Of a DNA stretch of 64,000 nucleotides, positions 367 to 57,408 are shown piece by piece; the first letter of the stretch is position 1; every line of letters starts with the position of its first letter. Position numbers and translations under genes: made by a program. This DNA is from Lytechinus pictus (taxonomy: Eukaryota), in NCBI RefSeq assembly GCF_037042905.1, contig NC_087248.1, positions 15,066,001-15,130,000 of the forward strand. The letters are read 5' to 3'. The notes below the pieces were generated by a model. That model was not told where the DNA came from. It was given only the letters and a program-made list of their open reading frames with translations, and ran no database searches.

Positions 367-566
367 ATATCGAGATTTTTTACCTGACTGCTAAAAAAGC
401 ACGAATGCCTGTGAGCAAGCAACCAGGGGACCAACGGCTTAAGGTCCTCTCCGAGGGACCTGGTAATGAGGATAAGCCTTAAGGGCACTAGCGCACCACT
501 TGGGAATCGAACCCGGGTCACCGGAATCCGAAACCCCTGCTCTACCGACTGAGCCATCGCGCCTCC
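367..566 (-). mobile_element. tRNA-derived SINE (family A, copy 1)
   Basis: Minus strand begins GGAGGCGCGATGGCTCAGTCGGTAGAGC (A box) ... GGGTTCGATTCCC (B box), then a non-tRNA body; near-identical copy at 44518-44725. Confidence 0.8.
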
Positions 567-2837: not shown

Positions 2838-8382
<5,545 letters not shown>

Positions 8383-9673: not shown

Positions 9674-10134
9674 TACATAGACAAATCACAAGCCTTTTTA
9701 AATAGTTGTTTTGTCAACTGTTTATTCTATTTAAATGAACACTAAACATCATATGTATAAAACTACAGGCTAATGCACATCCATATTATGAATTTATTTT
9801 CATCAATTACACTTGTTTTGGCATAAAAAATTGAATGCAGTTCTCTCCTTTTCCCCTATTTGATTTCTTTTCCTTTTTGGGTATAATTCGATTATTAAAA
9901 GTTTTGATATTAGTGATTACAATTATTCTCAACCAAAAATAAGGTTATGCTATCTTTTTTTCAGAATTAAGAAATATGCAAAATGCTTTTTCTTCTAAAA
10001 TCAGTTTGTAAACCAGTTATTTGCCTGTAATAGATGGTTTCTTATGGGAGCACACACTGACGGAATTCGTCAATAAAGACTTCCTGTCGAAATTACACAA
10101 CTACAACTGTTCCCCTTGGTCTTGGTATGGAAAT

Positions 10135-11196
10135 TTCATTGTGCAATGATGACAGAAGCTGGACGGCCTTAGAGCCTGCTCTGGCTCTTTCAGTCTTGAC
10201 CAAGCTTTGACAGTTTAACCTTTTCTATTGAGCCTTTCCAGGGTAACTGCATTGTCTTTCTAGGCAGCTTTCATTGTACAATGATGAGAGGGAGTGGACC
10301 GTCCCAGACGCTGCTTTGGCTTCTTTTAGTCTGGACCAAGCTTTGACAGCTTCACCCTTTCTATCAAGTTTCTCCAGGATTACTGTATAGTCTTTCTAGG
10401 CAGGTTTCATTGTACAATGATAAGAGGGAGTCGACCGTCCCGGTCGCTGCTTTGACTTCTTTTAGTCTGGACCAAGCTTTAACAGTTTCACTCTTTCTAT
10501 CAAGCTTCTCCAGGATTACTGCATGGTCTTTGTAGTAAGGTTTCATTGTACAATGATGAGAGGGAGTGGACCGTCCCAGAGGCTTCTTTTAGTCTTGACC
10601 AAGCTTTGACAGCTTCACCCTTTCTATTTAGCTTCTCCAGGATTACTGTATGGTCTTTGTAGGCAGGTTTCAGGGTACAATGATGAGAGGGAGTGGACCG
10701 TCCCAGATGCTGATTTGGCTTCTTTTAGTCTGGACCAAGCTTTGACAGCTTCACCCTTTCTATTTAGCTTCTCCAGGATTACTGTATGGTCTTTGTAGGC
10801 AGGTTTCAGGGTACAATGACGAGAGGGAGTGGACCGTCCCAGATGCTGATTTGGCTTCTTTTAGTCTGGACCAAGCTTTGACAGTTTCACCCTTTCTATC
10901 AAGCTTCTCCAGGACTACTGCATGGTCTTTCTAGGCAGGTTTCATTGTATAATGTTGAGAGGAAGTTGACCGTCTCAGATGCTGCTTTGGCTTCTTTTAG
11001 TCTGGACCAAGCTTTGACAGTTTCACCCTTTCTATCAAGCTTCTCCAGGATTACTGCATGGTCTTTGTAGGCAGGTTTCATTGTACAATGATGAGAGGGA
11101 GTGGACCTTCCCAGACGCTGCTTTGGCTTCTTTTAGTCTGGACCAAGCTTTGACAGCTTCACCCTTTCTATTTAGCTTCTCCAGGATTACTGCATG
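10135..11196 (-). repeat. 136-bp tandem array (8 units) derived from the last FANCG coding exon
   Basis: Anchor AAGCTTT(G/A)ACAG at 10202, 10338, 10474, 10601, 10737, 10873, 11009, 11145 (spacing 136, one 127). Confidence 0.93.
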
Positions 11197-14100
11197 GGTC
11201 CTCAAGGAATCTGTATTACCTGCATATGAGATAAGGATGAGAGAGGGTGAGTGAGAGAGAGGGAGGATAAGAGAGAGTGGGAAAGGAATCGGGAGAAGTG
11301 TATATGAGAGAGACAAGAATGGGAGAGAAGAAAAAATAGAAAGGGAAAATACGAAAAGGAGGAAGAGAGGAAGTAAAAGAGGTAAAAGATGGTTAAACTA
11401 TCGACAAATATCTAAGAGTTCAATAGAATAATATGCATCCATTTAAATCAAGTTGGGCAATGTATCGTGCAATACCTGAAACGATGCCAAATTCCCATTT
11501 TTGAAGTTCATGCATGGAAAAAGAATTCTGATATCTGATAATTTAAAATATTCCTTAGTTACGAGTCCATAGATAAGAAATTGCAAAGCCCATTTAAGTT
11601 ACTGATTCCATGATATGTAATGGAGCAATCAAATATTATTCCCAAGCCTACATATATTATTGAACAGTTACATGGGTTAATATAATATTGGCTTCGCACT
11701 AAAGCCACAAATGAGTTTCTCACTGGAATACTAAAATATCATTTCCAGGCCTAGCATTGACAAGTATGAATGATTTATGGATATAAAGGGTTCGCCAGTT
11801 TTAAAGCCACAAATTAGTTTCTAACTGGGATACTATAATATCACTCCAAGGTCTACCTACTAATGTTTTAAAGGTTAATAAGACTTCAAACTAAAGCCAC
11901 AATTTCTTACTGGGAAAGCAGTGGAGGCTTTGCAAGACGACTTTCATTGCATCGTGTGGCTGATTCTGACTCATTAAAATTGATGCTTTGAGCTGATATG
12001 CAATAGATTTCAGGATTGATGACTGCGTTGACTGACTGTCGAATAGGGAGCTTCCTATATTGTCTGGTATTTTCAGGCCATCTGATACTGTATGTTGGAA
12101 AATAAAGTCAGAAGTGACAGGTGTCAAAACCCTTTATCTCAAGAATGCAAAGGAAATAAAATTCAAGACATATGAAAAATTGATGCTGACAACATTACAA
12201 TACTAAGAAAGAGATTGATCTTAATTATTGGAAAAGTATCAACCACATTAACCATCAAAGAAACAATAGAAAAAATAGAAATAAAAACAAAAATACACAG
12301 GAAATTTTTAAAACAATAAAATACCTACAGTGGAAAGTAACATTTTCATACCAATTTTAAAGTTTATGTGCATGTGATCAAAATCCTACAATGAGTCCCG
12401 AGACAGAATGATTGCTTTATTTATAGATTTACAGCCACATCATAAATTCATGCATAAATTAGCACAATTAATTCATGTAAAAGAGATTCAGTGAAATCTG
12501 GCCATGTAACCTTATAGATCATGTAAGTTTTTTTACCATCGTGCAATATTCTGTTGTGATCGCACAATTTGCAGCCGAGGTTTTGAGGGGGTAATAATGC
12601 CCCCCAATCCCTGACTGACAAGACTAGAAATACCCAGAAAATAATAGGTTAAAATATGGAGCTGAGACAAAACAACTTGAACAAGACAGATCCTTGACTG
12701 TACGCACATCAGAACACCAAACTTCTACGATTATCAAATAATGATCTTTGTTACTTTTGACCTTCAACCTTGTAACCCCTACTATATGCATACATGAGTA
12801 AAGTTTGAAGTTGATAACTCGAAAAATATGGTACAGACGGACGGATGGACAGACAACCCCAAATCATCATGCCACCAGCACCCTCCTTTGGTGAGAGGTA
12901 ACATACTAGTAACTGATGTGAAAAGTGGCAGGGCGGGTTGACTCATGCATTTGTACCAAAAGAGATTAAAAGATCACTGTTTTAGCATTTGAAAGATAAT
13001 AATTGATACATACAGTATACGGGATAAGTCTAGAAACAGTACAAATTCAAGAAAAGAGTTCAGAGGTAAAAAGAGAAATTCCCTTCCTATAGTGAGCAGT
13101 CATTGAGACAATCTTTGTTTAGGATTTTTTTTCTACATAATATCATTCACCAATTTGGTCACATCAACTCCCTTTTATTGGGGGGGGGGGTTCTATTTGG
13201 CAATATCATCATGACTCATAACATGATAATTGATATTAATCAGATTTTAGCAGATAGAAAATATGTTTTACCTGAATCGATTCTTCTCCTTTTAGCCTTG
13301 CTGATATCATCTGTGCCCTCATTCTCCTCTATCCTTTGGCCATCCTCGACTCTTTCCGCTATACTGGTCTGCAAGATTCCCAAAGCACACTCAACTTCTG
13401 TCATGGCCAGCTCGGCTTTATGTTCCTTGAAGAGGCAATGTGCTTGCAGTATCAGGGCATGTGCGGTGTAGATTTCATCCTCTTCCTTCTCTTGTCTTCC
13501 ACTATCAGAATTGCTACTGTCAATGTGGACTTGGTTTTCAAGTGTTGATGAGGATGTTCCTGTGACTGCCAAGGTCTCATTCTGCTCCCGCTGCCTCTTC
13601 CTTCTGCCTACAGTGTCCCCAGAACCGCTTTGACCTTGCATGCCAGTACCATGATGGCCAACATTAATACCATGTCCAAGGGTGTGATGTCCACCGGAAC
13701 CACTGCTGCATCCAGGTATACTCCCATCCCTACCATCCCCGCCTCCTTGGTTGACTGGGTGTGAGCTCCTCTCCGCCTTGGAACGCTCCTCGGAAGACGG
13801 TGTTGCACATGGCACCAAGAAAGGGAACCTGCGGGATGACCTCTTGGTTTCATCATCATCCATCTCAGAGGATGAATCTGGTATGTTGTCATGTTGGAGA
13901 AGAGACGATTTGGACAGGAGTTTATCACACACCGCCAGTGCTTCCTGGGTTTTGCCTGCCTTCAGGAGGGCAGTGGCAGCATCCAAATAAATGGTTTTCA
14001 GAGGAGGCAGGAGTGAATTACCTCGGCTGCCTCTATCCTGAAAAGATAGATAAAACCATCCGTGATCAAATACATATCCACTCCCTCTTCCAGTAAAATT

Positions 14101-20100: not shown

Positions 20101-23100
20101 CCGGGGGGGGGGGGCAGTCTAATATATTCCTGTACACATGCATGACCAAAAAAATGTGTTTAAAGGGGTGTTTTTTCAGTTTTGGACGAGGGCTTCGCGT
20201 GCCCTCTTTAAGGGTATCAAAAACACCGATTTTCAAGAAAAAGGGTGGTTTTAAAAGACTGGTCAACTGTCAATCACGGGGTCAAATGTATTTAGGGTAT
20301 GTTTTTTCCCCAAGCTTTTTCCCAGGGGTCTAATTCTGGCGACAACTTGTTTAGGGGCCAAAATGTGTAAATAAAGCCCGCGAAAAACTTGTTGAGGGGG
20401 TTATTTTGCACACAGAGAAAAAACTTGTTTAGGGGGTGTTTGGAAATAATTTGGTCAAGCATGTGTACAGCAATACATTCGACTTCGCGCACAGGAGCAG
20501 GCAGCGCACTAGTGCTAGTTTACTTTAATGTGACTGTGATGCCTTAAAAATGAAAAAAAATTGGCAAAAGCGTAGGAAAAATTTACTGAAAAAAAAAAGA
20601 TCAAAATTTTGCAAAGAAATATGCTGCAAATTTCTCTCCCACCTCCTGGACCCTAGTAAACAGCTAATGCAAGCCGGTCGAGCCATGTCGGCCAGCGCAG
20701 CATAATCGCACACAATATTATGCACTAGCACAGCAAACAGATGTCGACTTTTTCCAATGAGGCATTGCGAGAATTTTGGCCTGTCCATTGCAACCGATAG
20801 ATGGCGCACCAAATTAGGTGAGAGTATCATGGAAAACTTTAGAAGTATATTTCAATGCTATAAATACCTAAACTACATGGACCACAGAAACTTAAAGAAC
20901 ATCAATTTTGCAGGAATGTCAGCATGACATAATAATATACCTCATCATTTGTCTGTAACATCTGTTCTATATAGCCAAGCTGAAGTTCCACGGACCATCT
21001 TTGTAGTAAACAGCATGATATCCACATCAAACCCAAGAGAACTACTTTATTTCCAACACCATTCAAATCTATCATGAAAAAAAAAACGATATCTAGTATT
21101 GTTCGTTAGCCATTTTCTTGTTCCCTATAAAAAATAAATAAATCATGATAAAAATTTCTAACCAATAAGAAGATTCAATTTGATTTGATACAATTTATTT
21201 TTAATACCATATTCAATTCTTAAAATAACAATACAAAACATATGAAAGATTTCATAACCAAATTAACAAATGAAAATGAAATGGAGAACTACAAGGTACA
21301 TATATAAAACCACAAGGCCTCGTACAATTTTACAGTTTCCAAACAAAACATCAAACTCAGGAGAACTACTTGATTTCCAACACCATTCAAATCTATCATG
21401 AAGAAAAAACGATATCTAGTATTGTTCGTTAGCCATTTTCTTGTTCCCTATCAAAAAATGAATAAATAAATAAATAAATCATGATAAAATTTCTAACCAA
21501 TAAGAAGATTCAATTTGATTTGATAAAATTTATTTTTAATACTATGGGGAACTTGGTCGCCCGCGCGAAGTGCTACAATACGCGCGACCGTGCGTGCGAC
21601 CATGCCCCCCAGAAACCCTCCATACGTACGCAGAATCAGGATCCCAAGATCAGACGCATTCTCACGTTCAGCTCTCGATCAGTACAGTACTACAGTCTAC
21701 TACGTATACGTCCCTCAAGTTCACACGAGTCATCAGGTTCTACGACAAGTCTACTTACAAGTTCTACGACAAGCTCTATATACTTACAAGTCATCGAAGT
21801 CTTCATCCTTTGTAAGATTAAGACGGATTGACCCAGGATTAAGGTGAGTATATGGTTCTCGGTAATCCAGCTTACTTTATTTAGGTTAACATCCATATAG
21901 TCAGTTTACTATATATTGGCGCTGCGTATGAACACGACTCTGCGCTAGTTTTGTAAATGCAGTAAAAAAAGCGGCGCAGAAAACTAAATTGGCTAGACAT
22001 CGTTTTAAGTGCTTAAAAGTAGGGAAAAGTGTACCGTAGGGCGGCAAAGTAAATCGCACTCTTTATAAATTGTTTAAACTTTTGATTCAATCCGCCGTCC
22101 TACAGCGATATAGATCTGTATTATAGTTATCTTAAACAAATAATAGCAGTGTTTTAGGGCTTATTCTCAGCGTTTTTGCGTAGGTTTTAAACCCTTACAC
22201 TATCCCCTTAACCCGGTTTAAATTTTGGGTGTGGCAGGACGCCACGTAGGGCACGCCATTTATGCAAATAGCGTTAAACGTTTTCTATTGTTCGCCGCTC
22301 CCCGCATTCTATTGTGTGTTAGGGCTGAATGTATGCCTTGCCTGAGAGTTGCTTGGGGTGTGGTTCTGGCGATGATTTTGTATGTACCCCCTTTCCCTGT
22401 TAGGATTTAATTAAATTAGGATTTGAATTTTGATGTAGGATAATTAAATTTAGGAATTGTACGTAACTGAGATATATATTTATTGTTGAATTTGGCTGTT
22501 GGTGATTTAATGATTGCGTGATTGGTGAAAGATCGTATTGCTTAACCTGACTTTCCCCCCTTTAGCTGTAGCAGACGACGAGGAATCTACGTACGTTGAG
22601 TAGTTGAGTTATGATGATTCTGTATATGCCGTTCTTGATTCGTGAGGTCGTGTATTGATATTACGAGTGAAAACGAATTTTGACCATTTCTTATACAGAT
22701 TTTCCCGTCTTGCAGTAATCATTTTTTGGCGCCAGTTAGGTTGCCGTTTTACGGATTTATTCGGCGCCGTTTAGATTGCCGTTTTGCATATAGGGAGGAT
22801 TTTACTATTGCCGTTTTATAGGTGCGTGAAGTCTGAATTATACCGTGACTTTTTTGTATGGAATTATCCTAGTGTTATCTGGCTAAAACGGAGTTACCCT
22901 CATACGACTTTAGTACGTCGGGTTTCTCTTGTGGACTTTATTTAATGATCAATTTGATTTCATCTCGGTATTAAGATATCATCTCAAAAAAAAAAAATAA
23001 ATAAATAAATAAATAAAAATAAAAATAATAAAATAAGGAGTGATTGATATATTTTATATGCCGTTGCAAGCCACCAATGCTTATATTTAGAGTGGCATTA

Positions 23101-26100
23101 AGCTACAAATTTTAGTGGATGGTATTTATATTAATTAATTACTTAGTCAGTTGGTGAATACTTAGAGTATTTTTTGGAGCTTGAACATAAGTCTGGGGAC
23201 TCGACCAATTATATTATATTGGCCTAACTTGTCTTCGGATTTAGTGAATATACTCATTGATTCCCGTCACGTACATTGGTGACGCTCGTATTTCGGACAA
23301 TTATTGTGCTAATTTTATTTTAGGACTGAAAGTTAACTTTTGACTTTGTATTTTTATAATACGGTCCGTCTCATTATAATCCGACGCTACTTGCGTTAGT
23401 GTAGTTCCAAAAAACTCTCTCGTACTTAATCTGTTCAGACTTCCGTACACCCGTTGGGAATTTATTTAGAGAAAAAAACTTAATAGTTTATTGGAGTTAA
23501 AGATTATATATTTTGACCGTTATAACAATCTCTGGCCACCGGTAGTTTGTTGCAAAGTCGCACCTGCTGTCAATTAAAAGTACAACGATATTATTAATAG
23601 GGCCTTTGTGGATTGTTTAAGCTGATCTGGAGTAAGGATTTTGCTGGATCGTTTGGAGGTTTATACTTTGGAGTTCTTTAGGACAGAAATTTGTACTTAA
23701 CTTAGTTAATACTAGAACTTCTTGTTATTTCTATTGAATTTATTCGAGAAAAGAAATACTTATGTCAATTTTGCTTTGAAAACAAAAAAATACTTATATA
23801 AATTTTGCTTTGAATAAAGAAGAAAATAAAATTTTCATTCGGTTCTGAGATAGAAAGTTTTGAATCTGTAATTCGAGTTTATATAGGAAAGAATTATTCC
23901 AAACAAATTTGACTTTGAGATATAATATTTTAGAACTTCCATCTAATTATAAGAGCATAGGGTGCTTGTAATTTATTTCGGTATTCTTAGTTTATATCAG
24001 TATTTGGTCATTTTCTTTGGTCATCGACAAGCAAGGTCATTTTTAGTTTTTAATTATCTGAAGGGTGTTTTCAGTATACAAAGCTTATAGATAAGGGATA
24101 AGCAAAGTATATATATATACGCCCGAAGATAATTTAAACTTTTGTGTCAGCAGTGGAGGCATTTTCCACTTAGTACACATATAGGTGCTGGGTGCACCTG
24201 GTTAGCTCAGCATCGGAGTAGAGGCTAGTGTTTTATTTTCGGTATATTTACACATTTGTACTTTAATAATATAGGCCTCATATTGGCCATATCAGAGCTT
24301 TAAACCTTTGATAAATTTTAATAATTAGGTTTTCCAAACAAACTTAGTTTTTAGTTGTTGTTGTTTAGCTCTCTGGTAAGATTGATGATTGAAAGTGATC
24401 AATCCTATTTGGTGGTGATCACTGATCAGTGATAATTCTGATTTTCGAAGGAGCTTTACTCAGTACTTAGGTGCTTGTTAGCGTAAGATAGAACTTTCAA
24501 AATTTAGTCACCCTTCCTCGAATCATGTCCAAGATTCAAATTAATTGTTGTGAACCAGAGGAGCTATTGAAGGTCCCAGGAATTGGTAGTACTTTGGCCG
24601 AGCGAATATTGGTCCTCCGAGAGGCTAATGATATTACGATGGAAACTTTCTTAGATATTCCGCACATACGTAATGCCTCTGAGATTGCAGGGTATTTTGA
24701 TTTTGCCCCTTATGCTGTTTTAGAATCTGGCACAAATTCTACCGATTCTATTGAGGAAAGAGTGATAGTAGGCCCTGCTGCGGCAGGTGATGTAGCAGCA
24801 CAGGGCGATGAGCAGCCAACCCAATCCCCCTCTCCCTACCCTTTTGAATCCTATCCTCAAGATTCGTTGCCAGGACATCTTAAAATAGTAATGGGGAGAG
24901 AGAGTGGAGAGTCAGGGGCTGCCAGCTCACGCAGAGATAAGGTAGCTAGAGGCAATTCGCCCTCACGGAAGCATGTGGTTTTCTCTTCGCCGCGAAAACG
25001 CACACCCCCACCGAGGGAAGGTGAGGATGATGGGCTTTCTTCCCCTATGAAGTCACCCTCAAGTGACCAGGCCAGTCCTAGGTCATCTAGGGATCATGCT
25101 AACCCACCAAGGGGTAGCCACGGGTCACCTATATCTCGGTCACCCACATCTGGTCGCCACAACAGCCGCCGTGGATCACCACGTACAAACCGCCGGGATA
25201 GTCGATTTGATTCTCCTTTTCGGGATTATGGTGGGCGCCGACAAGGGTCACCTAGAGGTCACAGGCGGGATCGATATGATCATAGTAGGGATCGTTATGA
25301 TCGGAGTAGGGATCGTTATGATTGCAGTAGGGATCGATATGACTACTATAGGAACAGGTATCGCTATTCCCCTCGCCGATATCGAAATGACCGTTATGAT
25401 TCTCCCCCACGATATTATAGGGGTAATCACAGTCCGTGTAGAGGTCGTGATGATTGGCATAGGTCAAACTCTAACCGTTCCCACTCGCCTGACCATGGCC
25501 CTCGTAGGTCATCATCCCCCCGAAGAACACAAGACCACAATAGGCGGGATGCAAGACAGTCAAATGAAGACGTAGCAGTTGATTTATCATCGCGTGTTTT
25601 GCAATCACTATTTGCCATCAACCGTGCCCCTGAAACGCAGGCCCCCCAATCCCAAGAGCATGATTTCGAGTCCCACAACCCACCACCGGTACGAAGATCC
25701 TTAAGTACCAGTACAGGGGAAGGGGACAGACCCCGACTGGTTTCGGTGCCAAAGTCCATAACCTTTAACGGTACGGGCAGCTGGCAAGCCTTCATTGCGA
25801 AGTTTAAATTATTCGCCAGTGAGAATGGGTGGGACGCCAAACAATCGCGTAATTACTTATGTTGGACGTTAGATGGGGAGGCTAGCTCCTATTTAGCCAC
25901 GCTTCTTGAGCGAGAGCCCGATATGCCATATAACATTATGGTGAATAGGATGGAAAAGAGGTTCACACTTAAAGAAATGCCTGAGGTATCGCAAATGAAT
26001 TTCTCTTATGCAAGACAGGCCCCTGACGAGAATGTCACCAAGTGGGCTGCTCGGTTGCTTACCTTAGCCTCTCAGGCTTTTCCTAATTTGCCCGAGGCAT

Positions 26101-29100
26101 ATGTGCAGCAGCAGGTAGTGATGCGTTTCTGCCAGGGCTCCGCAGATAAGGAAGCTGGGCAACATGCACTCAATTCCAGACCTAAGACTGTGGAAGAGGC
26201 TGTTGATCTTGTTAAATGGTATCAACACTCACACCGAGCTATTTATGGGAAACCGCGCAGGGAGGTTAAACATGTCTCCTTGTCTGAAAAGACCCCCCTT
26301 GAACCAACCGCAAGGCAGGTGAGTGCGCCCCATACTTCCCCAGCGTATACCGTTTTAGAGCGAAGGGTTTCCGCTTTAGAAGGGAAGATGGACTCTGCAC
26401 TAAAGCAATTGGAAGCACTTGGGTCTTTGCCGGCTACTGTTCAAAGCCTAGCTGAGAGTGTAAAAAAGTTAGTAGTTTCTCCTCGTGGTAGAGGCAGAGC
26501 ATCTCCTGCCCGAGGGAATATGTCACCGGGTCGTATTGGTGCCTGCTTCCACTGTGGAAAGTCTGGACACTTCAAGAACGAGTGTCCAGAACGAGGCCCC
26601 CGACCGAGCGTTTCCTTTGTCTGTGAAGTTTTGGGAAACGATTCGGGATCGGAGGAGGAGGTCCGACCCCGATCCCACTAAAAGCGGACCCCAATTCTAA
26701 TTTGGATTCCGAAAATGCCAAAGTACTTTTACAGGATTCGCTCTCTCAAGAGGAGCAAGAAACAGATATATCCTTGGTAGTACTTGAGGCTAACAGGTCG
26801 TTGGATAGCAAAGACTCTCTTCCCAGAGGAAGTAAGGAACTGGGTGTTCCCTCTCCTGAATTGATTGTTAAAGAATCCGAACTGAGAGATGGCGGTCAGG
26901 ACGGTATTGGTATCACTGAAGGGTCAGGGAAAGTTCCGAGTGTCAAGGAACTCTCCTCTCCACCCCCCATCAGCCAGGTGATTGATACGCCTAGGCCTCC
27001 ATTGGAGCCCAGCCCCTGGTTGGTACCCCCCTGGCCACCCCCTGAAGAGGATCCGCAATTAGATAGCTGGATCCTGAAGGACCTCGAACAGGCCTCGGAC
27101 GTTGTAGTCTGCCGGATAAAGTCATCATCTACTTATAGCATAAATATATTGGTCGGTAACCAATTGATGCGTGCCGTAATCGATACTGCTGCAGAGGTGA
27201 CTATAATGTCTGATAAAATCTACCATGCACTACGCCCCGCTCCTCCAGTTATTAGGTCAGTCGTCCTAAATACAGCTGGAAGAAATATGAGTATGACTGG
27301 AATAATTGTAGGACCGGTTGATATGACCCTAGGTGGCCAGACGTTTAGTGAATGCGTCTATGTTGCCCCGATAGACGATGATATGCTGCTTGGAGCTGAT
27401 CTCCTCAAGAAGCACAGTGCATTCATCAATATACCGGATTCCTTGTTAATCTTTCAGGGCGAGTGCATTACCATGACTTGTGGTGAAGACACTGATACCT
27501 CTCAGGTTTTCGTTTCAAATTCTGTGACCATCCCCCCAATGTCAGTCAAACGAGTACAATGCGAACTTGATTCTTCTTGCACGTTTGACCAGTTTATGGT
27601 AGAGCCGGATGTTGCCCTTATAGGATTGGTTCCCCGCACATTGCATTCTGGGAGTAGCTCTATACAGTTATATGCTGTGAATGCTACTGATGTTTCCATC
27701 CATTGGGATAAAGGTCAACACCTTGGACAGGCTTCTCGCGTAGGTTCTAGAGAACCCCCCGACTTTGACAATCCTATTCCAAGTGTCAGCCAGGTTGACT
27801 TGACTGGGGATGCCAAAATCCCCACCCATTTGGAAGATCTTTGGAAACGATCTTCGGAACACTTAATTCCTGAACAGCAAGGAATATTAAAGGGCTTGTT
27901 GCTAGAATTTGAGGGTGTCTTTGCCCGGGATGAATTCGACTTGGGTAATTTCACAGCCATTACCCATTCAATCGACACAGGCGAAGCTACGCCCATCAAG
28001 CAAAAGATGAGGCGTACACCCATGAACTTTGTTCAAGAGGAGCGAGCATGTCTTAACAAAATGCTGTCCGCCGGGGTGATCCAACCTTCGATGTCGGAAT
28101 GGGCGTCCGCCCCTGTCTTAATCCGAAAACGGGACGGTAGCGTCCGTTGGTGTATAGACTATCGTAAACTTAACAACGTTACGAAGAAAGATGTCTACCC
28201 GCTTCCTTGCATCGAAGAGTGTTTGGATACCTTAGCAGAGAATTCATGGTTCTCCAAACTAGATGCAAATTCTGCCTATTGGCAAGTCAATCTCAGGCCG
28301 GAAGACCGTGAAAAGACAGCATTTATCACCAAGTATGGTTTATACGAGTTTGTTCGCATGGGCTTCGGCTTATGTAATGCCCCAGCCACGTTCTCTCGAG
28401 CAATGAATCTCATCCTCAGGGGATTGAACTGGGATATCGCTTTAGCCTTCTTGGATGATGTTGTAGTGCTCGGCACCTCTTTCTCTGATCACGTCACTAA
28501 CATCAGACAGGTGTTGGAACGATTTAGGGACTTTAAGCTTAAGTTGAAGCCAAAGAAATGTTCCTTCTTCCAACGTCGGGTAGAGTTTCTTGGTAGAGAG
28601 GTTGATGGGAATGGTCTCCACCTTAAGGAAGAGCATGTTCAAGCCGTAGTGGACTGGCCCACCCCTAAGTCCACAAAGGAGGTGGAACGGCTCCTCGGAC
28701 TTGTAAATTATCACCGTGTCTTCCTTAAAGACTATGCCCAGGTTGTAGGGCCACTATATGGCCTCACTGGGAACAATGACTTCCGCTGGGAGGACCAGCA
28801 TCAAGTGGCTTTTGAGGAAGTCAAGAGGCTCATGACCACCGCCCCTATCCTCGCACTACCCAACTCCACGGATCCGTTCATTCTGGATACCGATGCGTCT
28901 GGCACAGCTATTGGGGCTGTTTTAACCCAAGTCCAACAGGGGCAAGAGCGAACTATTGCATATGGCAGTTTTTCCCTGACCCCTGAACAACGACGCTATT
29001 GTGTAACCAGGCGTGAGCTGTTGGCAGTGGTACGGTTTACCCGCCAGTATAGGCATTACCTCCTCGGAAAACCTTTTACAGTTCGCACGGACCATGGGAG

Positions 29101-32100
29101 TCTGACATGGTTAATGAACTTTAGGGAGCCTCAAGGGCAGCTTGCCCGGTGGCTCGAAGAACTGGGCCAATATGATATGGCAGTTGAACACCGCCCTGGC
29201 AAGAAACATCAGAATGCCGATGCATTGTCTCGTATACCCGACGGCGACTTTACATGTGAGAACTACCGTCTGGGTATTGACCCCAAGAGTTTGCCCTGTG
29301 GTGGTTGTGCATACTGCCTGAAGGCCCACACAGACTGGGCACACTTCACTGATGCTGTGGACAATGTGATCCAATTGGCACAAAGGAGTAAAGTTTCGGA
29401 AGTTACCCTTGACCCCGGAGAATCGGAGGACCTCTTTATCACTCACCTGGATATTGGTCCAATCGACGGTCCATTCTCTTTTAGGGTCAACGGGGTAACC
29501 CATGATGCCGGGTCTGGTATCGACCTCACCTCAATGGACTTTCTTCGGAAAGAACAAGAGGCTGATGGTCAACTGACCCCCTTGCGCAAATGGCTGCTCG
29601 ATAAAGAGGAACCAGACGAGGGAACTGTTCTTCTGTGGGACCCCGCTGGAAAGTTCCTATGGGTCAACCGAGAGCTGTTTGTGCTTAAGGATGGTGTCAT
29701 TTGGCGTAAAGGCGATGACAATCTCCTACTTGTAGTGCCCAAGTCTTTGCGTACTGAAGTGATCAAGCTAAATCATGATCCTCCTTCAGCAGCTCATGCT
29801 GGTGTGAACCGTACTAAAGGTAAACTTCGGTCCAAATACTACTGGTATGGTATGTCGGGCGACATCCAAGAGTATATTCGGAGATGTGCCGTCTGTAATA
29901 AAAATAAGAAAGCCGTGAGGTATGGGAAACACCCCATGATAACTTATCATGCGGGGGCCCCGATGGAACGTGTACACCTCGATTTCATGGGTCCTTTACC
30001 CAAAACCTCACGAGGTAACGTGTACATCTTGATGATGGTGGACCAGTTCACCAAGTGGGTTGAGTGTGTCCCACTGCCCTCTCAGACAGCGGAAGTAACT
30101 GCTCAGGCAGCCATTAGCGAGTTCTTTTGCCGCTTTGGCTATCCATTCCAGATTTTTACTGATCAGGGCAGAAATTTTGAGAGCAGGTTATTCACGAACA
30201 TCTGTAAACTGCTCCATATACATAAGGCTAGGACTTCCCCGTACCGACCTTCCGCAAACGGCCAGGTTGAACGTTTCAACCGAACCTTAATGGATGCGGT
30301 AAGGTGCTACATTGGGAAGTCCCAGACTCATTGGGACCACAACCTCGCCCAGATCGCTGGAGCGATTCGTTCCACGATCAACCGTAGTACGGGATTCACG
30401 CCCAATCAATTGATGCTGGGGCGTGAAACTAATCAACCAGCGGAGCTGATTTTTCCACTTCCCCCATCCGTCTCTGACCGACCTCTGGATGAATATTCAT
30501 CTCAGAGCATCCGAGAGGCGCACGATGCTGCGAGAGCCACCCTCCGGAATACACAGCGACGGTTGAAGCGGGATTACGACATAAAGGTATACTTGCGGCA
30601 ATTTAAAGAAGGGGACCGAGTATACCTTCTCGCCAAGGCGACCCCCAAGGGAAAATGCAAGAAGCTGCAATCTCCCTGGAAGGGTCCGGCTATTATCGTG
30701 AAGCGATATACCCCTTATGTATACCGGGTGATCTATCGGAACAAGGCCCTGACTGTAAACCATGACCAGCTCAAAAGGTGCCTTGACGAGGCCAAGCCCT
30801 CAGGCCCTGACTGGAGGAAGGAAAGGTATTGCTACTGTAGAACCCCCGACGATGGATCGTTCATGATTCAATGTGATGGGTGCGATGAGTGGTTCCATGG
30901 TGCATGTGTTGGTGTTACCCATGCGGAAGGAATGTCTATTGACAAGTATTTTTGTCCTTTTTGTAGCTGTGGGTAACCCATTTCCTTTTCTCTTTTCAGA
31001 TGGATGAGCTAGAACTCCACGCCGAGTCAACCTTCGAGGTGGAAATGGACACCCGGCCCCCCTCTACCCCCCCAGAGGCTATCCCTCCAGAGGCTGCCTG
31101 GCAAGCAGAAATAGATGCACGGATGGGCCCAATCCCGCCCCCTGGCAGTAGACAAAAACGTACGTGGCTCCGTAAGTTGCGTCGATTACGGAGTCGGTTA
31201 AGGGCAGGGTCCAGGGATTCCCCTAATTCCCTAAAGGAAACTCCCGGTCCTGCCCCTGTCATGATGAAGGGCGTTAAGCCATCCAAAGGAATGGGGAGGG
31301 GGAGAGGGTTTGCAAGGGTCCGCAAGGGTCCCATAACACCCGGCACGCCCGGTACTTTCCATAGTAAGGGGAGAGGGAGGGGTCTCTTGAATTACCTCAA
31401 CCGAGAAGATTTCTCTTTAATGGATGCCCCCGCCCCTGCTCCGAGCTCCCATCCCCCGCCTCTGCTAGGGTTTGATAGCCATTTTCACCCAGACAGGTGT
31501 GGTTGGTACAGTAAGAGAAAGGGGAAGAGCGTGGTGACAAAGCACCCGGTAGAGATAGTCGGAGGGGTCCTGAACTTCTGTGACCCAGAGTTCTTTATGG
31601 ACCCCGGCTTTCTTTCCCGGGTGCTGGCTCACAGCCCCCCATACAACAAGAGGGACGGGAGCTGGAGATTAGCAGTAGGGATACACCCTAAACAGGCCTC
31701 GCAGTACACCGAAGATCAGTGGCAGCGTTTGGTTGCCCTACTTCAAAGCCCCTTGGTTGTAGGCGTAAGCGAACTGGGCTTTGACTTTTCTGTCAACTCC
31801 CAGTGGTGGCCTGACCAGGAAGCGCTCTTTCTGCGACTTCTTGGTCAGGGCACCCAAGGGAGGGTCCTTATCCTTCACCTAAGGGGTGATTCGAAGAATA
31901 ATACCGCGTACGCGGCGCACACTTTGGCCCGCCGGCTTCTTGCAAAGCACTGCTCCCCACTCCAAAGGATACACATCCATAACTTCTCCAGCGATGCTTT
32001 GCAAGCCGGGAAATGGATCGCTGCCTTTCCATATTGCTATTTCGGTATTGCCGGGATGGCAGCGTACTTCACAACAGAACAAATTCAAGGCCTTAGGGCC

Positions 32101-35100
32101 GTCCCCGCGGATCGGCTAATTCTGGAGACCGATGCTCCGCATCTCCCTCCTCGCCCGGACATGACGGTGACTTCACCTGAAAGCCTGGGTGATGTGGGGG
32201 CGGTGGTAGCCAACCTGCGGGGGCAGCCCTTGGCCACTATAATGGCCCAAGCCACATACAATGCAAAACTACTGTATGGCCTGTTAGGGTAATAGGGTAT
32301 GTTATTCATTTTTTTGGTGGCCCCTGTCTCATGTTTTATTTTTCTGTCCAAAATCTTGCCCTTCCTACTTTGGAAGTTAATTAAAAGATAAAGTCGCGGC
32401 CTATCCATGTAATTGAGGGGTCTTAGGTTCTTCTCTTCTGCGATGCAGTATTTTCTCTCTCCGGAGAACGTTTCTATTCTGTATCGTGGCGGAGAAGGAC
32501 TGAGAAGTTTTCCCAACGTACCGGGCCGAACTAGACCAGATTTTACATTCCCAAGTGGAAAGTGTCTGTTGGCTGTCATCTTTCGGACCCTCCTTAGTCT
32601 TCAGGGACTGGTAAAGGTTGCGGACTCTTATATTCCATAAAGCCCAAGGGACATTGGTTTAGTTTTTTGAAATATTGTGCCAACTTGTGTCGCACGTAAA
32701 GTTATATATCCAGGTGATATTATATTTATTCCAACCGTGGTGCCAAAATACGTCACAAGTGAGTTTATAAATTTCTTTACATACTATCCAGCGGATATAG
32801 GTTTGGTTTTCAAAGACAATATTGTGCCAAGTTGTGTCACACAAAGTTTTTTAGTTATTTCAACCATTGTGCCGAATGACGTCACAGGTAAAATTATACA
32901 TTTCCTTTAATGATATCCAGGCGATATGGTCTTCAATTTAGTTTTAAAGTCTGCTGGCCAAGCAAGGCTTATTACTTGGTTATCATCCTCCAAAGATTGG
33001 GGATTGAGATTTGGGGCCATCCATATTTTTTTGTGTGTAAATAGTCCTTTTCACGCATGAACTACATGAACTACATGCTTAGTAGCTCGTAACCTAAAGA
33101 CATGTATACATATATATGTATATGTTCAATAAAGTTTTTTGAGGGTCTGTTTAATGCCCACGAGTATAGGGAAAGAAACCTAAATTTCCTTAGTATATGT
33201 TTTCGTGATATTTCCGAGATACTGGGAAGTAAATAGTTCCTTTCAGGGGTCTAGGACGAGTGTTTTTATTCTTGGTACTACATGTACCGGTTTATTGTTA
33301 CTTTTTTGTCCACTCCTCAGACCTATCTTTATATCTACATGAGTGATTAGGAAAGTACAGTTAATAATCAATCTCCCCTTTATTTTTACGGTTGGGGGGA
33401 ATATGGGGAACTTGGTCGCCCGCGCGAAGTGCTACAATACGCGCGACCGTGCGTGCGACCATGCCCCCCAGAAACCCTCCATACGTACGCAGAATCAGGA
33501 TCCCAAGATCAGAGGCATTCTCACGTTCAGCTCTCGATCAGTACAGTACTACAGTCTACTACGTATACGTCCCTCAAGTTCACACGAGTCATCAGGTTCT
33601 ACGACAAGTCTACTTACAAGTTCTACGACAAGCTCTATATACTTACAAGTCATCGAAGTCTTCATCCTTTGTAAGATTAAGACGGATTGACCCAGGATTA
33701 AGGTGAGTATATGGTTCTCGGTAATCCAGCTTACTTTATTTAGGTTAACATCCATATAGTCAGTTTACTATAATACCATATTCAATTCTTAAAATAATAA
33801 TACAAAACATATGAAAGATTTCATAACCAAATAAAAAAATGAAAATGAAAAGAACTACAAGGTACATATATAAAACCACAAGGCCTTGTTCAAATTTACA
33901 GTTTCCAAACAAAACAAAAATGACAGTTTATTCAAATGATTCACCAGAGCTCTGACAATGTTTTGAACAATAATAGTAGGTAGTGTATTACTTATCAAGA
34001 AAATTACTGCCATCATACTTGACATATGAATCACAAAGAAAGACACAAATAGTGTAACTATCAAGAAAACCACGACCAAGAAAATATGTGAAAGATATTG
34101 AATTCAAGCGACTGATTATGATTGTGTAGCTAGTTTATTGTCTAGCTAGTGACTTCAAATCTCCATAATTTTATTTGCAGGAATTTTTGGGGGCCGACAA
34201 GAATTTGATATGGAGGCTTGTTTCATACTGTATAGTAATTTTTTACAAATGTTACAAATATATTCTAGAGTAAGTAGAGTAGGCCTACTGTGAATGATAT
34301 TATAAGATAACGTCTCTGCATCTGAAAGGCACGGTATATAGTAAGTTTAATAGAAGCATACTTTTAATATAATTTTTATGTTGAATTTACCTGACGATTT
34401 AATTGAAATCTTCTGAATCATGATGGTGATGTCATCTTCTTGTGGAGCCTCCTCACCATACAAAAACCTGTAGACTGAAAGAAAAAAGTTTAGGTTTGAC
34501 AGTGTCCAATTCACATTCAATAGACTTTCTTGATAAATATACAAACCCATGCTAAATATGTTGAGCCCCCCCCCCCCTTCAGCAAAAAAAAAAAATCAAT
34601 CAGGGTCAAGAGTTTTAAATCACTTCTATGAGTATAACCAGGAGAAATGCTCTTTATTTAAAAAAAATAGATAGAATTAATTCACACACCCTCCATCTAA
34701 AGAAAAATAAAATGAATAAATCAAACTACACTTTTTCAATTAAAAAAGAAAACAATCAGAAATAAATTAATGTTCTTTTACAATTCTCAAGAAATTACAT
34801 ATTTTTATATTTCAAAAACATAATGGAAGGGCAAATGAAAATTCAATGTTGGCCGAGTTTCATTTGAAACCCCCCTTTTGTGCTTGACTTGAATCATTAC
34901 TATTTTGTTCAATTGTTGGATGCTTTACCACTAAAACCAACCCATTGCAGCGGGTCCCTCTATATGCTTTCCTCAGCTTACCTCTTCTGAAGGCTTGGTT
35001 GATCATCGGGCGACTTAACCCTACCAGACCATCCGGTCCATGCTCGCCTGATCTTCTTAGATTGTTAATCGCATGTTTGCATGTTGCACTGAGAACAGTC

Positions 35101-56867: not shown

Positions 56868-57220
56868 CTGACATTGTGCAACACAATTATATCCAGAAAA
56901 TGCAATATTAATGAAAATAAATTTCAAATTTTAAGGGATCGACAAAATTTTTTACTCTTTCAATCCATTCCACATGTTGAATATATTAAGCGCGCAAATT
57001 TTAGCGCGCACAATCTTTTGTGCGCGTAGAGGTCTCCGATCGAATTATCGCCCTACTTATTTTGATACTGATAAACAAGAACACTTTTTTTGTCCATTTT
57101 ATTATCAAATCTATATGGCAGTGAGTCCAAACTTCGCGCGTGTCCATACTTCGCGGACGGTCATTATCTTAAAAAATAGCCAATATCCTTAAAATCTGAC
57201 ATCATCAACGTGAAAAGCGA

Positions 57221-57408
57221 CCTAAAATTACCCTTTGGTGTAAGTTTCTTTAGGATGAGTTCAGTATTCATGAAAATATTGGCAAAAGATCGGCAAATTT
57301 GTCACCGTTAGCGCCTAAAATTACCCTTTGGTGTAAGTTTCTTTAGGATGAGTTCAGTATTCATGAAAATATTGGCAAAAGATCGGCAAATTTGTCACCG
57401 TTAGCGCC
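57221..57408. repeat. Perfect 93-bp tandem duplication
   Basis: 57221-57313 is repeated at 57314-57406. Confidence 0.92.

What the first reader, a model, noticed from the sequence alone, without database searches (positions are those of the whole stretch)
21543..33772. Intact Gypsy retrotransposon carrying three extra DNA/chromatin modules: HhH-Gag, PHD-integrase and a TatD DNase in the env slot
Seen: all three ORFs lie between two almost identical LTRs and none has a stop or frameshift lesion, and PBS, PPT, frameshift and splice signals are all present. Established: Ty3/Gypsy elements normally carry gag and pol, sometimes env, and chromoviruses add a chromodomain to integrase. Inference: this is an active lineage with a DNA-binding capsid protein, a histone-mark reader for targeting and its own nuclease. 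I do not know a description of this combination, but I cannot search to confirm that.
Basis: partly seen in the sequence, partly recalled or inferred. Interest (0 to 1): 0.95.

Follow-up and report, generated by a model that had tools for sequence, protein, structure and literature searches.

The report
Sea-urchin Gypsy retrotransposon with TatD nuclease gene
This is an intact, very young copy of a sea-urchin Gypsy-type retrotransposon whose lineage, found in several marine invertebrates, always carries a DNA-binding motif on its capsid protein, a histone-reading finger on its integrase and, where an envelope gene would sit, a conserved TatD-type nuclease gene that I could not find described in any paper I could search.

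Summary
Window 21543-33772 is a 12.2-kb LTR retrotransposon. Its 371-bp LTRs differ at one base. It has a 4-bp target duplication, a PBS-like site, a polypurine tract and three intact ORFs.

- ORF1 (gag) has an N-terminal helix-hairpin-helix (HhH), a capsid-like region and a CCHC knuckle.
- ORF2 (pol) is reached by a -1 frameshift. It encodes PR-RT-RNaseH-IN and ends in a PHD finger. The finger's closest solved relatives are CFP1, PHF2, BPTF and DIDO1, known as H3K4me3 readers (my knowledge).
- ORF3 (430 aa) has an arginine-rich N-terminus and a TatD TIM-barrel with all metal-ligand positions kept. It has no membrane segment.

A strong splice donor in the LTR and a strong acceptor directly before the ORF3 ATG suggest a subgenomic mRNA.

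Two more intact copies about 99% identical lie in Lytechinus pictus. Between the three copies ORF3 shows 5 synonymous and 0 nonsynonymous changes.

The same three-module layout recurs in S. purpuratus, L. variegatus and six metagenome or unnamed assembly contigs, three of which held only the pol end and TatD. ORF3 identity there falls to 30-36%.

PHD fingers in retrotransposons, and exonuclease genes in the env position (DEDDy type, in rotifers), are already described. A TatD gene there, and this trio, I did not find described. What the nuclease acts on is inferred only. I rate it a new variant of a known kind, interest 0.6.

The parts
21539..21542 (+). left copy of the target-site duplication (ATAC)
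   Evidence: The L001 copy has ATGC at both ends.
21543..21913 (+). 5' LTR (371 bp)
   Evidence: 370/371 identical to the 3' LTR. The terminus TATGGGGAA is shared with the S. purpuratus relative.
21841..21849 (+). 5' splice donor inside the LTR (AAG|GTGAGT, exon end 21843)
   Evidence: A donor-like site lies at the same relative place in the S. purpuratus LTR.
21917..21926 (+). PBS-like site starting TGG, 3 nt after the LTR
   Evidence: the same 10 nt follow the LTR of L004. The cognate tRNA was not identified.
21914..24524 (+). long leader without an ORF over 61 aa
   Evidence: Between copies it carries more indels than the coding part.
24525..26681 (+). ORF1, gag (718 aa). Order: HhH, then an Arg/Ser/Pro-rich region, then a capsid-like region, then CCHC.
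24531..24632 (+). helix-hairpin-helix motif at the Gag N-terminus (aa 3-36)
   Evidence: The hairpin P-G-I-G is invariant in 5 relatives. The closest solved proteins are EEPD1 and ComEA.
25842..26081 (+). capsid-like region (weak PNMA match, aa 440-519)
   Evidence: The same weak match occurs in L003.
26541..26591 (+). CCHC zinc knuckle (aa 673-689)
26633..26639 (+). slippery heptamer GGGAAAC for a programmed -1 frameshift, in phase
   Evidence: In-phase heptamers also lie in the gag/pol overlap of L001, L002, L004 and L003.
26645..26676 (+). predicted stem-loop 5 nt after the heptamer
   Evidence: -29.8 kcal/mol for the whole 91-nt stretch folded, z -2.06
26627..30976 (+). ORF2, pol. The frame is open from 26627 and the listed ORF starts at 26702 (1424 aa). 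Order: PR-RT-RNaseH-IN-PHD.
27143..27412 (+). aspartyl protease; the active-site triad reads D-T-A
28121..28597 (+). reverse transcriptase (RVT_1; F-L-D-D motif)
28787..29173 (+). RNase H
29735..30307 (+). integrase: H2C2 zinc domain and DDE core
30830..30964 (+). PHD finger at the C-terminus of integrase (aa 1377-1421)
   Evidence: The best solved matches are CFP1, PHF2, BPTF, DIDO1, PHF8, Spp1 and TAF3.
30978..30999 (+). 3' splice acceptor (pyrimidine tract plus CAG) ending at the base before the ORF3 ATG
   Evidence: Acceptors lie at or just before ORF3 in L004, L005 and L006.
31000..32292 (+). ORF3 (430 aa), an accessory nuclease gene in the position of env
31147..31206 (+). arginine-rich helix (aa 50-69) shared with P0003 and P0004
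31465..32289 (+). TatD TIM-barrel domain (aa 156-430)
33390..33401 (+). polypurine tract directly before the 3' LTR
   Evidence: A similar tract lies in L004.
33402..33772 (+). 3' LTR
33773..33776 (+). right copy of the target-site duplication (ATAC)

Best explanation
What it is. This is an intact, recently inserted copy of a multi-copy Ty3/Gypsy-type LTR retrotransposon in a Lytechinus (most likely L. pictus) genome. It belongs to a lineage, found in several marine invertebrates, with a fixed layout:
- LTR
- a long leader
- gag, with an N-terminal helix-hairpin-helix
- a -1 frameshift
- pol, as PR-RT-RNaseH-IN with a C-terminal PHD finger
- a separate ORF3 with a TatD-fold metal-dependent nuclease
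- a polypurine tract and the second LTR

Shown here: the anatomy, the conservation of all three modules, their co-divergence and purifying selection.

Inferred:
1. ORF3 is translated from a subgenomic mRNA spliced from the donor in the 5' LTR to the acceptor directly before its ATG, as env is in env-bearing relatives.
2. The Gag HhH binds DNA without sequence preference. It holds the particle or pre-integration complex on chromatin.
3. The PHD finger reads H3K4me3 and biases integration towards active promoter chromatin, as the chromodomain does for other marks in chromoviruses.
4. ORF3 is an active nuclease supplied in trans. It is probably nuclear, because of its arginine-rich N-terminus. 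It works on the element's own reverse-transcription intermediates or by-products: single-stranded DNA ends or the RNA of RNA-DNA hybrids. This matches what TatD enzymes are known to cut.

My rough odds: point 1, 0.7; point 3, 0.5; point 2, 0.4; point 4, 0.35 for the substrate and 0.75 for being an active nuclease.
For: Anatomy.

Copies: three loci are 98.9-99.4% identical, and all ORFs are intact in each. LTR pairs are 100% identical in L001 and L002 and 99.7% in the window.

Selection between copies (nonsynonymous/synonymous changes, with the binomial P against neutrality):
- ORF3: 0/5, P 0.0008
- ORF2: 12/11, P 0.007
- ORF1: 5/7, P 0.01

Same gene order elsewhere:
- S. purpuratus L004: identical LTRs, three intact ORFs.
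- L. variegatus L005.
- Full gag-pol-TatD layout in TARA scaffold L003, in the ENA contig of P0004 and in metagenome contig L011.
- Three shorter contigs hold only the pol end and TatD: JGI L006, ENA L008 and metagenome contig L010.
- An Acanthaster planci gene model joins IN, PHD and TatD.

Co-divergence: IN-PHD and TatD distances correlate, r 0.68, Mantel P 0.005.

TatD:
- Pfam E 4e-29.
- Solved bacterial TatD and YcfH proteins match at E 1e-13 to 1e-10.
- The AlphaFold model has pLDDT above 85 over most of the barrel. Foldseek TM is 0.77-0.78 to TatD structures.
- The H-x-H, Glu, His, His and Glu/Asp positions are invariant or nearly so in 13 family members.
- No hydrophobic segment: maximum Kyte-Doolittle 1.36.

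Splice signals are conserved in position in relatives whose LTRs do not align.

PHD: the best solved relatives are CFP1, PHF2, BPTF, DIDO1, PHF8, Spp1 and TAF3, at E 9e-15 to 5e-10. The alignments show the zinc ligands and the Trp before the His kept.

HhH.

Frameshift.
Against: - No expression data were available, so the splice model rests on signals only.
- The window copy sits in an AT-rich tandem repeat, not in an obvious promoter. One copy (L002) shows no target duplication. The few insertion sites seen neither support nor exclude promoter targeting.
- ORF3 is not part of Gag-Pol, so nothing shows that it meets the replication complex.
- In some relatives, PHD and TatD lie in one called ORF or gene model (P0006, A. 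planci P0291). The way ORF3 is expressed may therefore differ between lineages.
- Three more distant family members stand alone, with no gag or pol within 10 kb. The protein can evidently persist outside an element.
- The HhH match in the window itself is 0.2 bits under Pfam's cut-off.
Confidence: 0.8

Rival explanations
1. ORF3 is mainly a regulatory or RNA-handling protein rather than a DNA nuclease. Its arginine-rich helix would bind the element's RNA. It would then act like the Cer1 CERV protein or a retroviral Rev, with the TatD barrel serving as a binding or RNA-trimming module.
For: - An arginine-rich helix at aa 50-69 is conserved in P0003 and P0004.
- CERV of Cer1 is a non-env protein encoded at the env position by a spliced mRNA. 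It is needed for export of genomic RNA (PMC10309623).
- The unspliced RNA keeps a strong donor and acceptor, and would need help to leave the nucleus.
- NCBI's model for E. coli TatD (NF007745) names it a 3'-5' ssDNA/RNA exonuclease.
Against: - All metal-ligand positions are kept over 30-36% identity. That argues for catalysis, not mere binding.
- The arginine-rich helix is missing from the long-form relatives. Those carry a different Cys/His-rich N-terminal module.
Confidence: 0.15
2. ORF3 is made as a C-terminal extension of Pol (IN-PHD-TatD), by splicing or recoding, and is not a separate protein.
For: - In P0006, the PHD finger and TatD lie in one called ORF.
- The A. planci gene model P0291 joins rve, PHD and TatD.
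- In the window only 23 nt separate the pol stop from the ORF3 ATG.
Against: - In the window, L001, L002, L004 and L006, pol ends in a stop and ORF3 starts with its own ATG.
- In the window ORF3 is in another frame, and the 10-nt overlap of open frames holds no slippery heptamer.
- The acceptor lies directly before the ATG, as expected for a leader-to-ORF3 splice.
Confidence: 0.08
3. ORF3 is a passenger: a host or bacterial TatD gene picked up by chance, with no role for the element.
For: - The closest non-element relatives are bacterial-type TatD, YcfH and YabD proteins at about 30% identity.
- Stand-alone family members exist.
Against: - TatD is present in every copy and in relatives down to 30-36% identity.
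- It co-diverges with integrase.
- It shows 0 nonsynonymous against 5 synonymous changes between copies.
- Its catalytic positions are kept.
Confidence: 0.02
4. The element is a dead relic or an assembly artefact, not part of a living family.
For: The L002 copy lacks a clear target duplication. No expression data were seen.
Against: - Three separate loci have different flanks.
- LTR pairs are identical or nearly so.
- All ORFs are intact.
- The excess of synonymous change can only arise while copies descend from functioning parents.
Confidence: 0.03

Closest known systems
Juno and Vesta LTR retrotransposons of bdelloid rotifers, with a DEDDy-type 3'-5' exonuclease ORF3 (PMC5408684)
   Same: [quoted passage not shown] In both, the role of the nuclease is unknown.
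   Different: The fold is unrelated (DnaQ-like DEDDy against a TatD TIM-barrel), and so are the host phylum and the element lineage. The rotifer elements carry dUTPase, and no HhH or PHD is reported for them.
Chromoviruses (Ty3/Gypsy with a chromodomain on integrase) and other retrotransposons with PHD fingers (CR1-like elements, REM1 of Chlamydomonas; cited in PMC6673714)
   Same: A histone-tail reader is fused to, or encoded beside, the integration machinery. Targeting through chromatin marks is the accepted reading for chromodomains.
   Different: It sits at the very end of a Gypsy integrase in animals. No chromodomain was detected.
Cer1 of C. elegans and its CERV protein (PMC10309623)
   Same: A Gypsy-type element with a non-env protein encoded at the env position and made from a spliced mRNA.
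   Different: CERV has no enzyme fold and no relatives outside nematodes. ORF3 here is a recognisable TatD nuclease.
Env-bearing Gypsy elements of insects (errantiviruses)
   Same: Three ORFs, a -1 frameshift between gag and pol, and a third ORF served by a subgenomic splice.
   Different: ORF3 here has no signal peptide, no membrane segment and no glycoprotein fold.
Cellular TatD nucleases (E. coli TatD and YcfH, S. aureus and Thermotoga TatD, human TATDN1 and TATDN3)
   Same: The same TIM-barrel fold and the same metal-ligand positions.
   Different: The element protein carries a 155-aa disordered, arginine-rich N-terminal extension (much longer in relatives). It falls far below NCBIfam's cut-offs for any bacterial TatD family (79 bits against 206). 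It is encoded inside a retrotransposon.
Chromatin tethers in retroviral Gag (foamy-virus Gag chromatin-binding site, MLV p12); from my own knowledge, not tested here
   Same: A Gag-borne module that could hold the incoming complex on host chromatin.
   Different: Those are short peptide motifs that bind nucleosomes. Here it is a ComEA/EEPD1-type HhH that would bind the DNA backbone.

Membership tests
Ty3/Gypsy LTR retrotransposons (Metaviridae) | Two direct LTRs flanked by a short target-site duplication | tested here: met
   371-bp LTRs, 370/371 identical, with a 4-bp duplication
Ty3/Gypsy LTR retrotransposons (Metaviridae) | Primer-binding site after the 5' LTR and polypurine tract before the 3' LTR | tested here: met
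   The PBS-like 10 nt are shared with the S. purpuratus relative. The tRNA was not identified.
Ty3/Gypsy LTR retrotransposons (Metaviridae) | pol domain order PR-RT-RNaseH-IN | tested here: met
   domains at aa 148-237, 474-632, 696-824 and 1012-1202
Ty3/Gypsy LTR retrotransposons (Metaviridae) | gag with a capsid-like domain and a CCHC knuckle | tested here: met
   The capsid match is weak (PNMA, 18 bits).
Ty3/Gypsy LTR retrotransposons (Metaviridae) | Placement of the RT inside a named Gypsy clade by phylogeny | not tested
   No reference set of named clades (GyDB, Repbase, Dfam) was available.
Chromoviruses | Chromodomain at the C-terminus of integrase | tested here: not met
   no chromodomain match. 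A PHD finger occupies that place.
Env-bearing Gypsy elements (errantivirus-like) | ORF3 is a membrane glycoprotein with a signal peptide and a transmembrane segment | tested here: not met
   TatD fold, maximum hydropathy 1.36
TatD nuclease family (PF01026) | Profile match above the curated cut-off | tested here: met
   102 bits against a cut-off of 27
TatD nuclease family (PF01026) | TIM-barrel fold like solved TatD proteins | tested here: met
   TM 0.77-0.78 (normalised to the target) to 6l25, 2gzx and 1j6o
TatD nuclease family (PF01026) | Metal-ligand His, Glu and Asp positions kept | tested here: met
   H161, H163, E258, H293, H325/H327 and E376/D378 are invariant or at least 90% conserved in 13 members
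TatD nuclease family (PF01026) | Metal-dependent nuclease activity | not testable with these tools
   No test of enzyme activity is possible with these tools.
PHD fingers that read H3K4me3 | Cys4-His-Cys3 ligand pattern, and closest solved relatives that are known readers | tested here: met
   CFP1, PHF2, BPTF, DIDO1, PHF8, Spp1 and TAF3 at E 9e-15 to 5e-10
PHD fingers that read H3K4me3 | Binding of the methylated histone tail | not testable with these tools
   Inferred from similarity only.
Helix-hairpin-helix DNA-binding motifs (HHH_3, ComEA type) | Profile match and conserved hairpin | tested here: met
   - Window: 26.8 bits against a cut-off of 27.
- Relatives: 40 and 27.2 bits.
- The hairpin is invariant in 5 sequences.
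- EEPD1 and ComEA are the best solved matches.
Rotifer Juno/Vesta elements with an exonuclease ORF3 | DEDDy (DnaQ-like) fold of ORF3 | tested here: not met
   ORF3 is a TatD barrel. The likeness is in kind, not in descent.

The most novel reading that the evidence does not exclude
The TatD ORF3 is a counter-defence gene. It would act like cellular TREX1, removing surplus or abortive reverse-transcription products (single-stranded DNA, RNA-DNA hybrids), so that the element escapes the nucleic-acid sensors of the cGAS-STING type that echinoderms and molluscs have in large numbers. If so, a whole retrotransposon lineage of marine invertebrates would carry its own immune-evasion nuclease. The stand-alone family members could then be copies taken over by hosts.
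Probability: 0.15. Interest if true: 0.85.

Novelty: new variant of a known kind. Interest (0 to 1): 0.6.

Why it matters
Accessory genes of retroviruses and their relatives show what limits replication inside a host. This nuclease gene has been kept across a deeply diverged element lineage: its protein identity falls to 30-36%, with the catalytic positions intact. So it does something the element needs, and no paper I could search says what.

The same lineage pairs it with two chromatin or DNA modules. That makes it a natural case for studying how an element chooses and reaches its integration sites in animals with no genetic tools for this.

There is also a practical side.
- ORF3 and pol of these elements are annotated as host genes in sea-urchin and oyster genomes, under names such as 'YabD-like', 'TatD-like' and 'mucin-17-like'.
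- They are filed under bacterial genome bins from clam symbionts.

Both should be corrected.

Tried and rejected
- Rfam scan of the element at E up to 0.1: nothing.
- The only tRNA gene in the window does not match the PBS.
- Protein search with Gag gave only six hits. Its low-complexity middle took up the search words.
- The metagenome scan with TatD patterns returned mostly bacterial TatD genes. Only two of 80 loci were elements.
- Seven literature searches paired TatD terms with retrotransposon, Gypsy, LTR, transposable element, reverse transcriptase/integrase, retroelement or Ty3. None found a paper on a TatD gene in a retroelement. Repbase, Dfam and GyDB could not be searched, so an unremarked catalogue entry cannot be excluded. 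This matters most for S. purpuratus.
- An env reading of ORF3 was rejected: no membrane segment, and an enzyme fold.
- A pol-ORF3 frameshift was rejected: no slippery site in the 10-nt overlap.
- A strong acceptor before the gag ATG, which would have explained the long leader as an intron, was not found.
- The neighbour-joining tree of TatD domains is rough. I use it only to say that the stand-alone members are not clear outgroups.

That indirectly bounds their frame breaks. I did not use or repeat those bounds, and nothing was deleted.

Full report
**1. The observation**

A pair of direct repeats bounds the region: 21543-21913 and 33402-33772. Each is 371 bp, they match at 370 of 371 bases, and there are no gaps.

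The four bases ATAC lie on both sides, at 21539-21542 and 33773-33776. The element splits a short tandem repeat of about 330 bp, whose two halves still match across the insertion.

The element is richer in G+C than its surroundings (0.46 against 0.36-0.38) and richer in CpG.

Inside, three long ORFs on the + strand have no internal stop:
- 24525-26681 (718 aa)
- 26702-30976 (1424 aa, frame open from 26627)
- 31000-32292 (430 aa)

**2. The three proteins**

*ORF1.* Pfam finds an HHH_3 helix-hairpin-helix at aa 3-36, at 26.8 bits against a cut-off of 27. It also finds a CCHC knuckle at aa 673-689 and a weak PNMA-type capsid match. Between them lies a 300-residue stretch rich in Arg, Ser and Pro.

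*ORF2.* It has protease, RT, RNase H, the integrase zinc domain and core, and a PHD finger at aa 1377-1421, three residues before the stop. The RT has an F-L-D-D motif. The integrase has the H-H-C-C and D-D-E spacings. The protease triad reads D-T-A instead of the usual D-T/S-G. This holds in most relatives too.

*ORF3.*
- It matches TatD_DNase over aa 158-427, at E 4e-29.
- It matches solved bacterial TatD and YcfH proteins by sequence, at E 1e-13 to 1e-10.
- It scores far below NCBIfam's cut-offs for any bacterial TatD family.
- An AlphaFold model built on 13 family members has a confident barrel and a mostly disordered N-terminal 150 residues. That N-terminal part contains one arginine-rich helix.
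- Foldseek places the barrel with TatD structures, at TM 0.77-0.78 normalised to the target.
- The positions that hold the metal ions in TatD enzymes (H-x-H, Glu, His, His, Glu/Asp) are invariant or nearly so in the family alignment. All are present here.
- There is no hydrophobic segment. ORF3 is therefore not an envelope protein.

**3. Signals**

*Primer-binding site.* A site beginning TGG lies three bases after the 5' LTR, at 21917-21926. The same ten bases follow the LTR of the S. purpuratus relative.

*Polypurine tract.* A purine tract at 33390-33401 abuts the 3' LTR.

*Frameshift.*
- ORF2 is in the -1 frame relative to ORF1, and the two frames overlap by 55 nt.
- Inside the overlap the heptamer GGGAAAC (26633-26639) lies in the X XXY YYZ phase.
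- A predicted stem-loop starts five bases after it.
- In-phase heptamers sit in the same overlap in both sister copies, in the S. purpuratus element and in a TARA scaffold.

*Splice sites.*
- A consensus donor AAG|GTGAGT lies in the LTR, at 21843|21844.
- The strongest acceptor in the element has 15 of 15 pyrimidines followed by CAG. It ends at 30999, the base before the ORF3 ATG.
- Acceptors lie just before the ORF3 ATG in L004 and L006, and at the pol/ORF3 boundary in L005.
- The unalignable LTR of the S. purpuratus element has a donor-like site at the same relative place.
- This pattern is expected for a leader-to-ORF3 subgenomic mRNA. No transcript data were available to prove it.

**4. 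Source and copies**

The exact ORF3 protein is encoded at two other loci of assembly GCA_037042905.1. The Holothuria scabra genome paper cites that assembly as Lytechinus pictus (PMC11082199).

Both loci hold full elements that are 99.4% and 98.9% identical to the window copy. Their flanks differ, their LTR pairs are 100% identical, and all three ORFs are intact. The window is therefore a third locus of a young family.

On the three-copy tree the changes are:

| ORF | Nonsynonymous | Synonymous | Binomial P against neutrality |
|---|---|---|---|
| ORF3 | 0 | 5 | 0.0008 |
| ORF2 | 12 | 11 | 0.007 |
| ORF1 | 5 | 7 | 0.01 |

A deficit like this can only build up while copies descend from working parents.

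**5. The lineage**

I examined the genomic context of 13 further family members.

The same order, pol ending in IN-PHD followed by TatD, with HhH-gag upstream where the contig reached that far, was found in:
- S. purpuratus (L004): identical 266-bp LTRs and three intact ORFs. NCBI annotates only the last 238 aa of ORF3.
- L. variegatus (L005): a degraded copy. gag ends short of the pol frame, pol is split into two ORFs, and the integrase part has one in-frame stop.
- A TARA ocean scaffold (L003).
- A JGI contig (L006): one in-frame stop.
- ENA contigs: P0004, P0006, P0007 and L008.
- Two metagenome contigs: L010, and L011, which has several frame breaks.

An Acanthaster planci gene model joins rve, PHD and TatD.

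Identity to the window protein falls to 30-36% for TatD and about 50% for pol, yet the architecture holds.

The HhH is above Pfam's cut-off in L003 (40 bits) and L004 (27.2 bits). Its hairpin is invariant in five sequences. Its closest solved relatives are the HhH repeats of EEPD1 and ComEA.

Distances for IN-PHD and for TatD across eight elements correlate (r 0.68, Mantel P 0.005). TatD evolves about one and a half to two and a half times as fast. This fits one old capture followed by descent within the lineage.

A profile search of 1.84 billion representatives gave 886 clusters at E up to 1e-30. All of the best 150 scored above 260 bits, and most carry long N-terminal extensions.

The search with the PHD-integrase part returned over 1000 proteins. 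The named ones come from sea urchins, a starfish, oysters, abalone, whelk, a vent snail and an acorn worm.

Three more distant TatD family members stand alone, with no gag or pol within 10 kb: Ostrea edulis L007, P0156 and P0254. In a rough tree they are not clear outgroups. Whether they are remnants, host-adopted copies or the source of the capture remains open.

**6. How it most likely works**

Shown: the element has everything a Gypsy-type element needs, plus three conserved extras under selection.

Inferred:
- *Gag HhH.* It sits where retroviral Gag proteins carry their membrane or chromatin-contact modules. HhH motifs of the ComEA type bind the DNA backbone without sequence preference. 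I therefore read it as a tether to DNA or chromatin.
- *PHD finger.* It belongs to the sequence group of CFP1, PHF2, BPTF, DIDO1, PHF8, Spp1 and TAF3. All of these are known readers of H3K4me3. The alignments show the zinc ligands and the tryptophan before the histidine kept. At the end of integrase it would bias integration towards active promoters.
- *Insertion sites.* The few sites seen do not test this. The S. purpuratus copy ends 456 bp upstream of an annotated gene start, while the window copy lies in a tandem repeat.
- *ORF3.* It would be a trans-acting nuclease made from its own mRNA. TatD enzymes are 3'-5' exonucleases on single-stranded DNA and RNA, and some animal members cut the RNA of RNA-DNA hybrids (my knowledge). 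The natural substrates in a retroelement are therefore reverse-transcription intermediates or by-products. I cannot tell whether the purpose is maturation, clean-up or hiding from innate sensors. The last is my 'novel case'.

**7. Comparison with what is known**

- The nearest precedent for ORF3 is the DEDDy exonuclease ORF3 of the rotifer Juno and Vesta elements (PMC5408684). It is the same kind of gene in the same place, with a different fold, and its role is just as unknown.
- Cer1's CERV shows that the env position can hold a spliced, non-env accessory gene (PMC10309623).
- PHD fingers are reported in CR1-like elements, in REM1 and in Ginger1 transposases (PMC6673714, PMC2836005). Chromodomains on Gypsy integrases are textbook knowledge.
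- I found no paper that links TatD with any retroelement.
- The BFVD library of viral protein structures holds a single TatD-like match, from a giant virus.
- Repbase, Dfam and GyDB could not be searched.

**8. Verdict**

The novelty lies in the TatD accessory gene and in the conserved trio of modules. It does not lie in the idea of extra domains as such. I rate it a new variant of a known kind, with interest 0.6.

**9. Slip**

The tblastn tables list matches by frame for two degraded relatives, and so indirectly bound their breaks. I did not use or repeat these bounds.

Noticed in passing
window 27182-27190 (ORF2 aa 161-163) and relatives L003, L004, L005: The protease active-site triad reads D-T-A instead of the usual D-T/S-G. 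The same holds in most relatives checked. One database pol has D-S-G and one has D-S-A.
   Followed up: partly
window 21914-24524: A 2.6-kb leader lies between the PBS and the gag ATG. It has no ORF over 61 aa and no Rfam match. Between copies it carries more indels than the coding part. The S. purpuratus relative has a leader of about 1.9 kb with 57-bp tandem repeats. How gag is translated past it is unexplained.
   Followed up: partly
L007 10001-13309 (Ostrea edulis), and the contigs of P0156 and P0254: TatD-family proteins share the long N-terminal module of the long-form element ORF3s. They stand alone, with no gag or pol within 10 kb. The oyster gene is a single 1102-aa ORF. They may be remnants, host-adopted copies or the source of the capture.
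   Followed up: partly
alignment A1, long-form ORF3s (P0006, P0008, P0010, P0014, P0015): Long-form ORF3s share a Cys/His-rich N-terminal module with no Pfam match. The window's short-form ORF3 lacks it and has an arginine-rich helix instead.
   Followed up: no
proteins P0292, P0310, P0318, P0391: pol proteins of this animal retrotransposon lineage are deposited under bacterial genome bins (Sedimenticola, and Thiodiazotropha from lucinid clams). They are most likely host contigs that were mis-binned.
   Followed up: no
proteins P0002, P0005, P0009, P0191, P0275: Element ORF3s are annotated as host genes in sea-urchin genomes, under the names 'TatD-like', 'YabD-like' and 'mucin-17-like'. In S. 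purpuratus only the last 238 aa of a 472-aa ORF are annotated.
   Followed up: partly
L004 11636-12092: The S. purpuratus copy ends 456 bp upstream of the annotated start of a PDZ-domain gene on the same strand. In L002 a 676-aa ORF starts 3.5 kb downstream. This is anecdotal, but it fits promoter-proximal insertion.
   Followed up: no
L002 around 555 and 12798: This sister copy shows no evident target-site duplication. It may have arisen by recombination between copies.
   Followed up: no
window 21543-21545 and 33770-33772: The LTR termini read TA...TA rather than the usual TG...CA. The 5' terminus is shared with the S. purpuratus relative.
   Followed up: partly
window 491-562 (-): ARAGORN calls a tRNA-Arg (TCG) gene here. 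Its 3' end does not match the element's PBS.
   Followed up: partly
window 59250-59879 (-): A 209-aa ORF with a reverse-transcriptase match (RVT_1, E 1e-25): a fragment of another retroelement.
   Followed up: no
window 10134-11197, 55572-55892, 57216-57408: Tandem arrays with units of 136 (or 399), 129 and 93 bp. Window 6845-7445 and 58237-58449 match interspersed repeats next to the sister copies.
   Followed up: no
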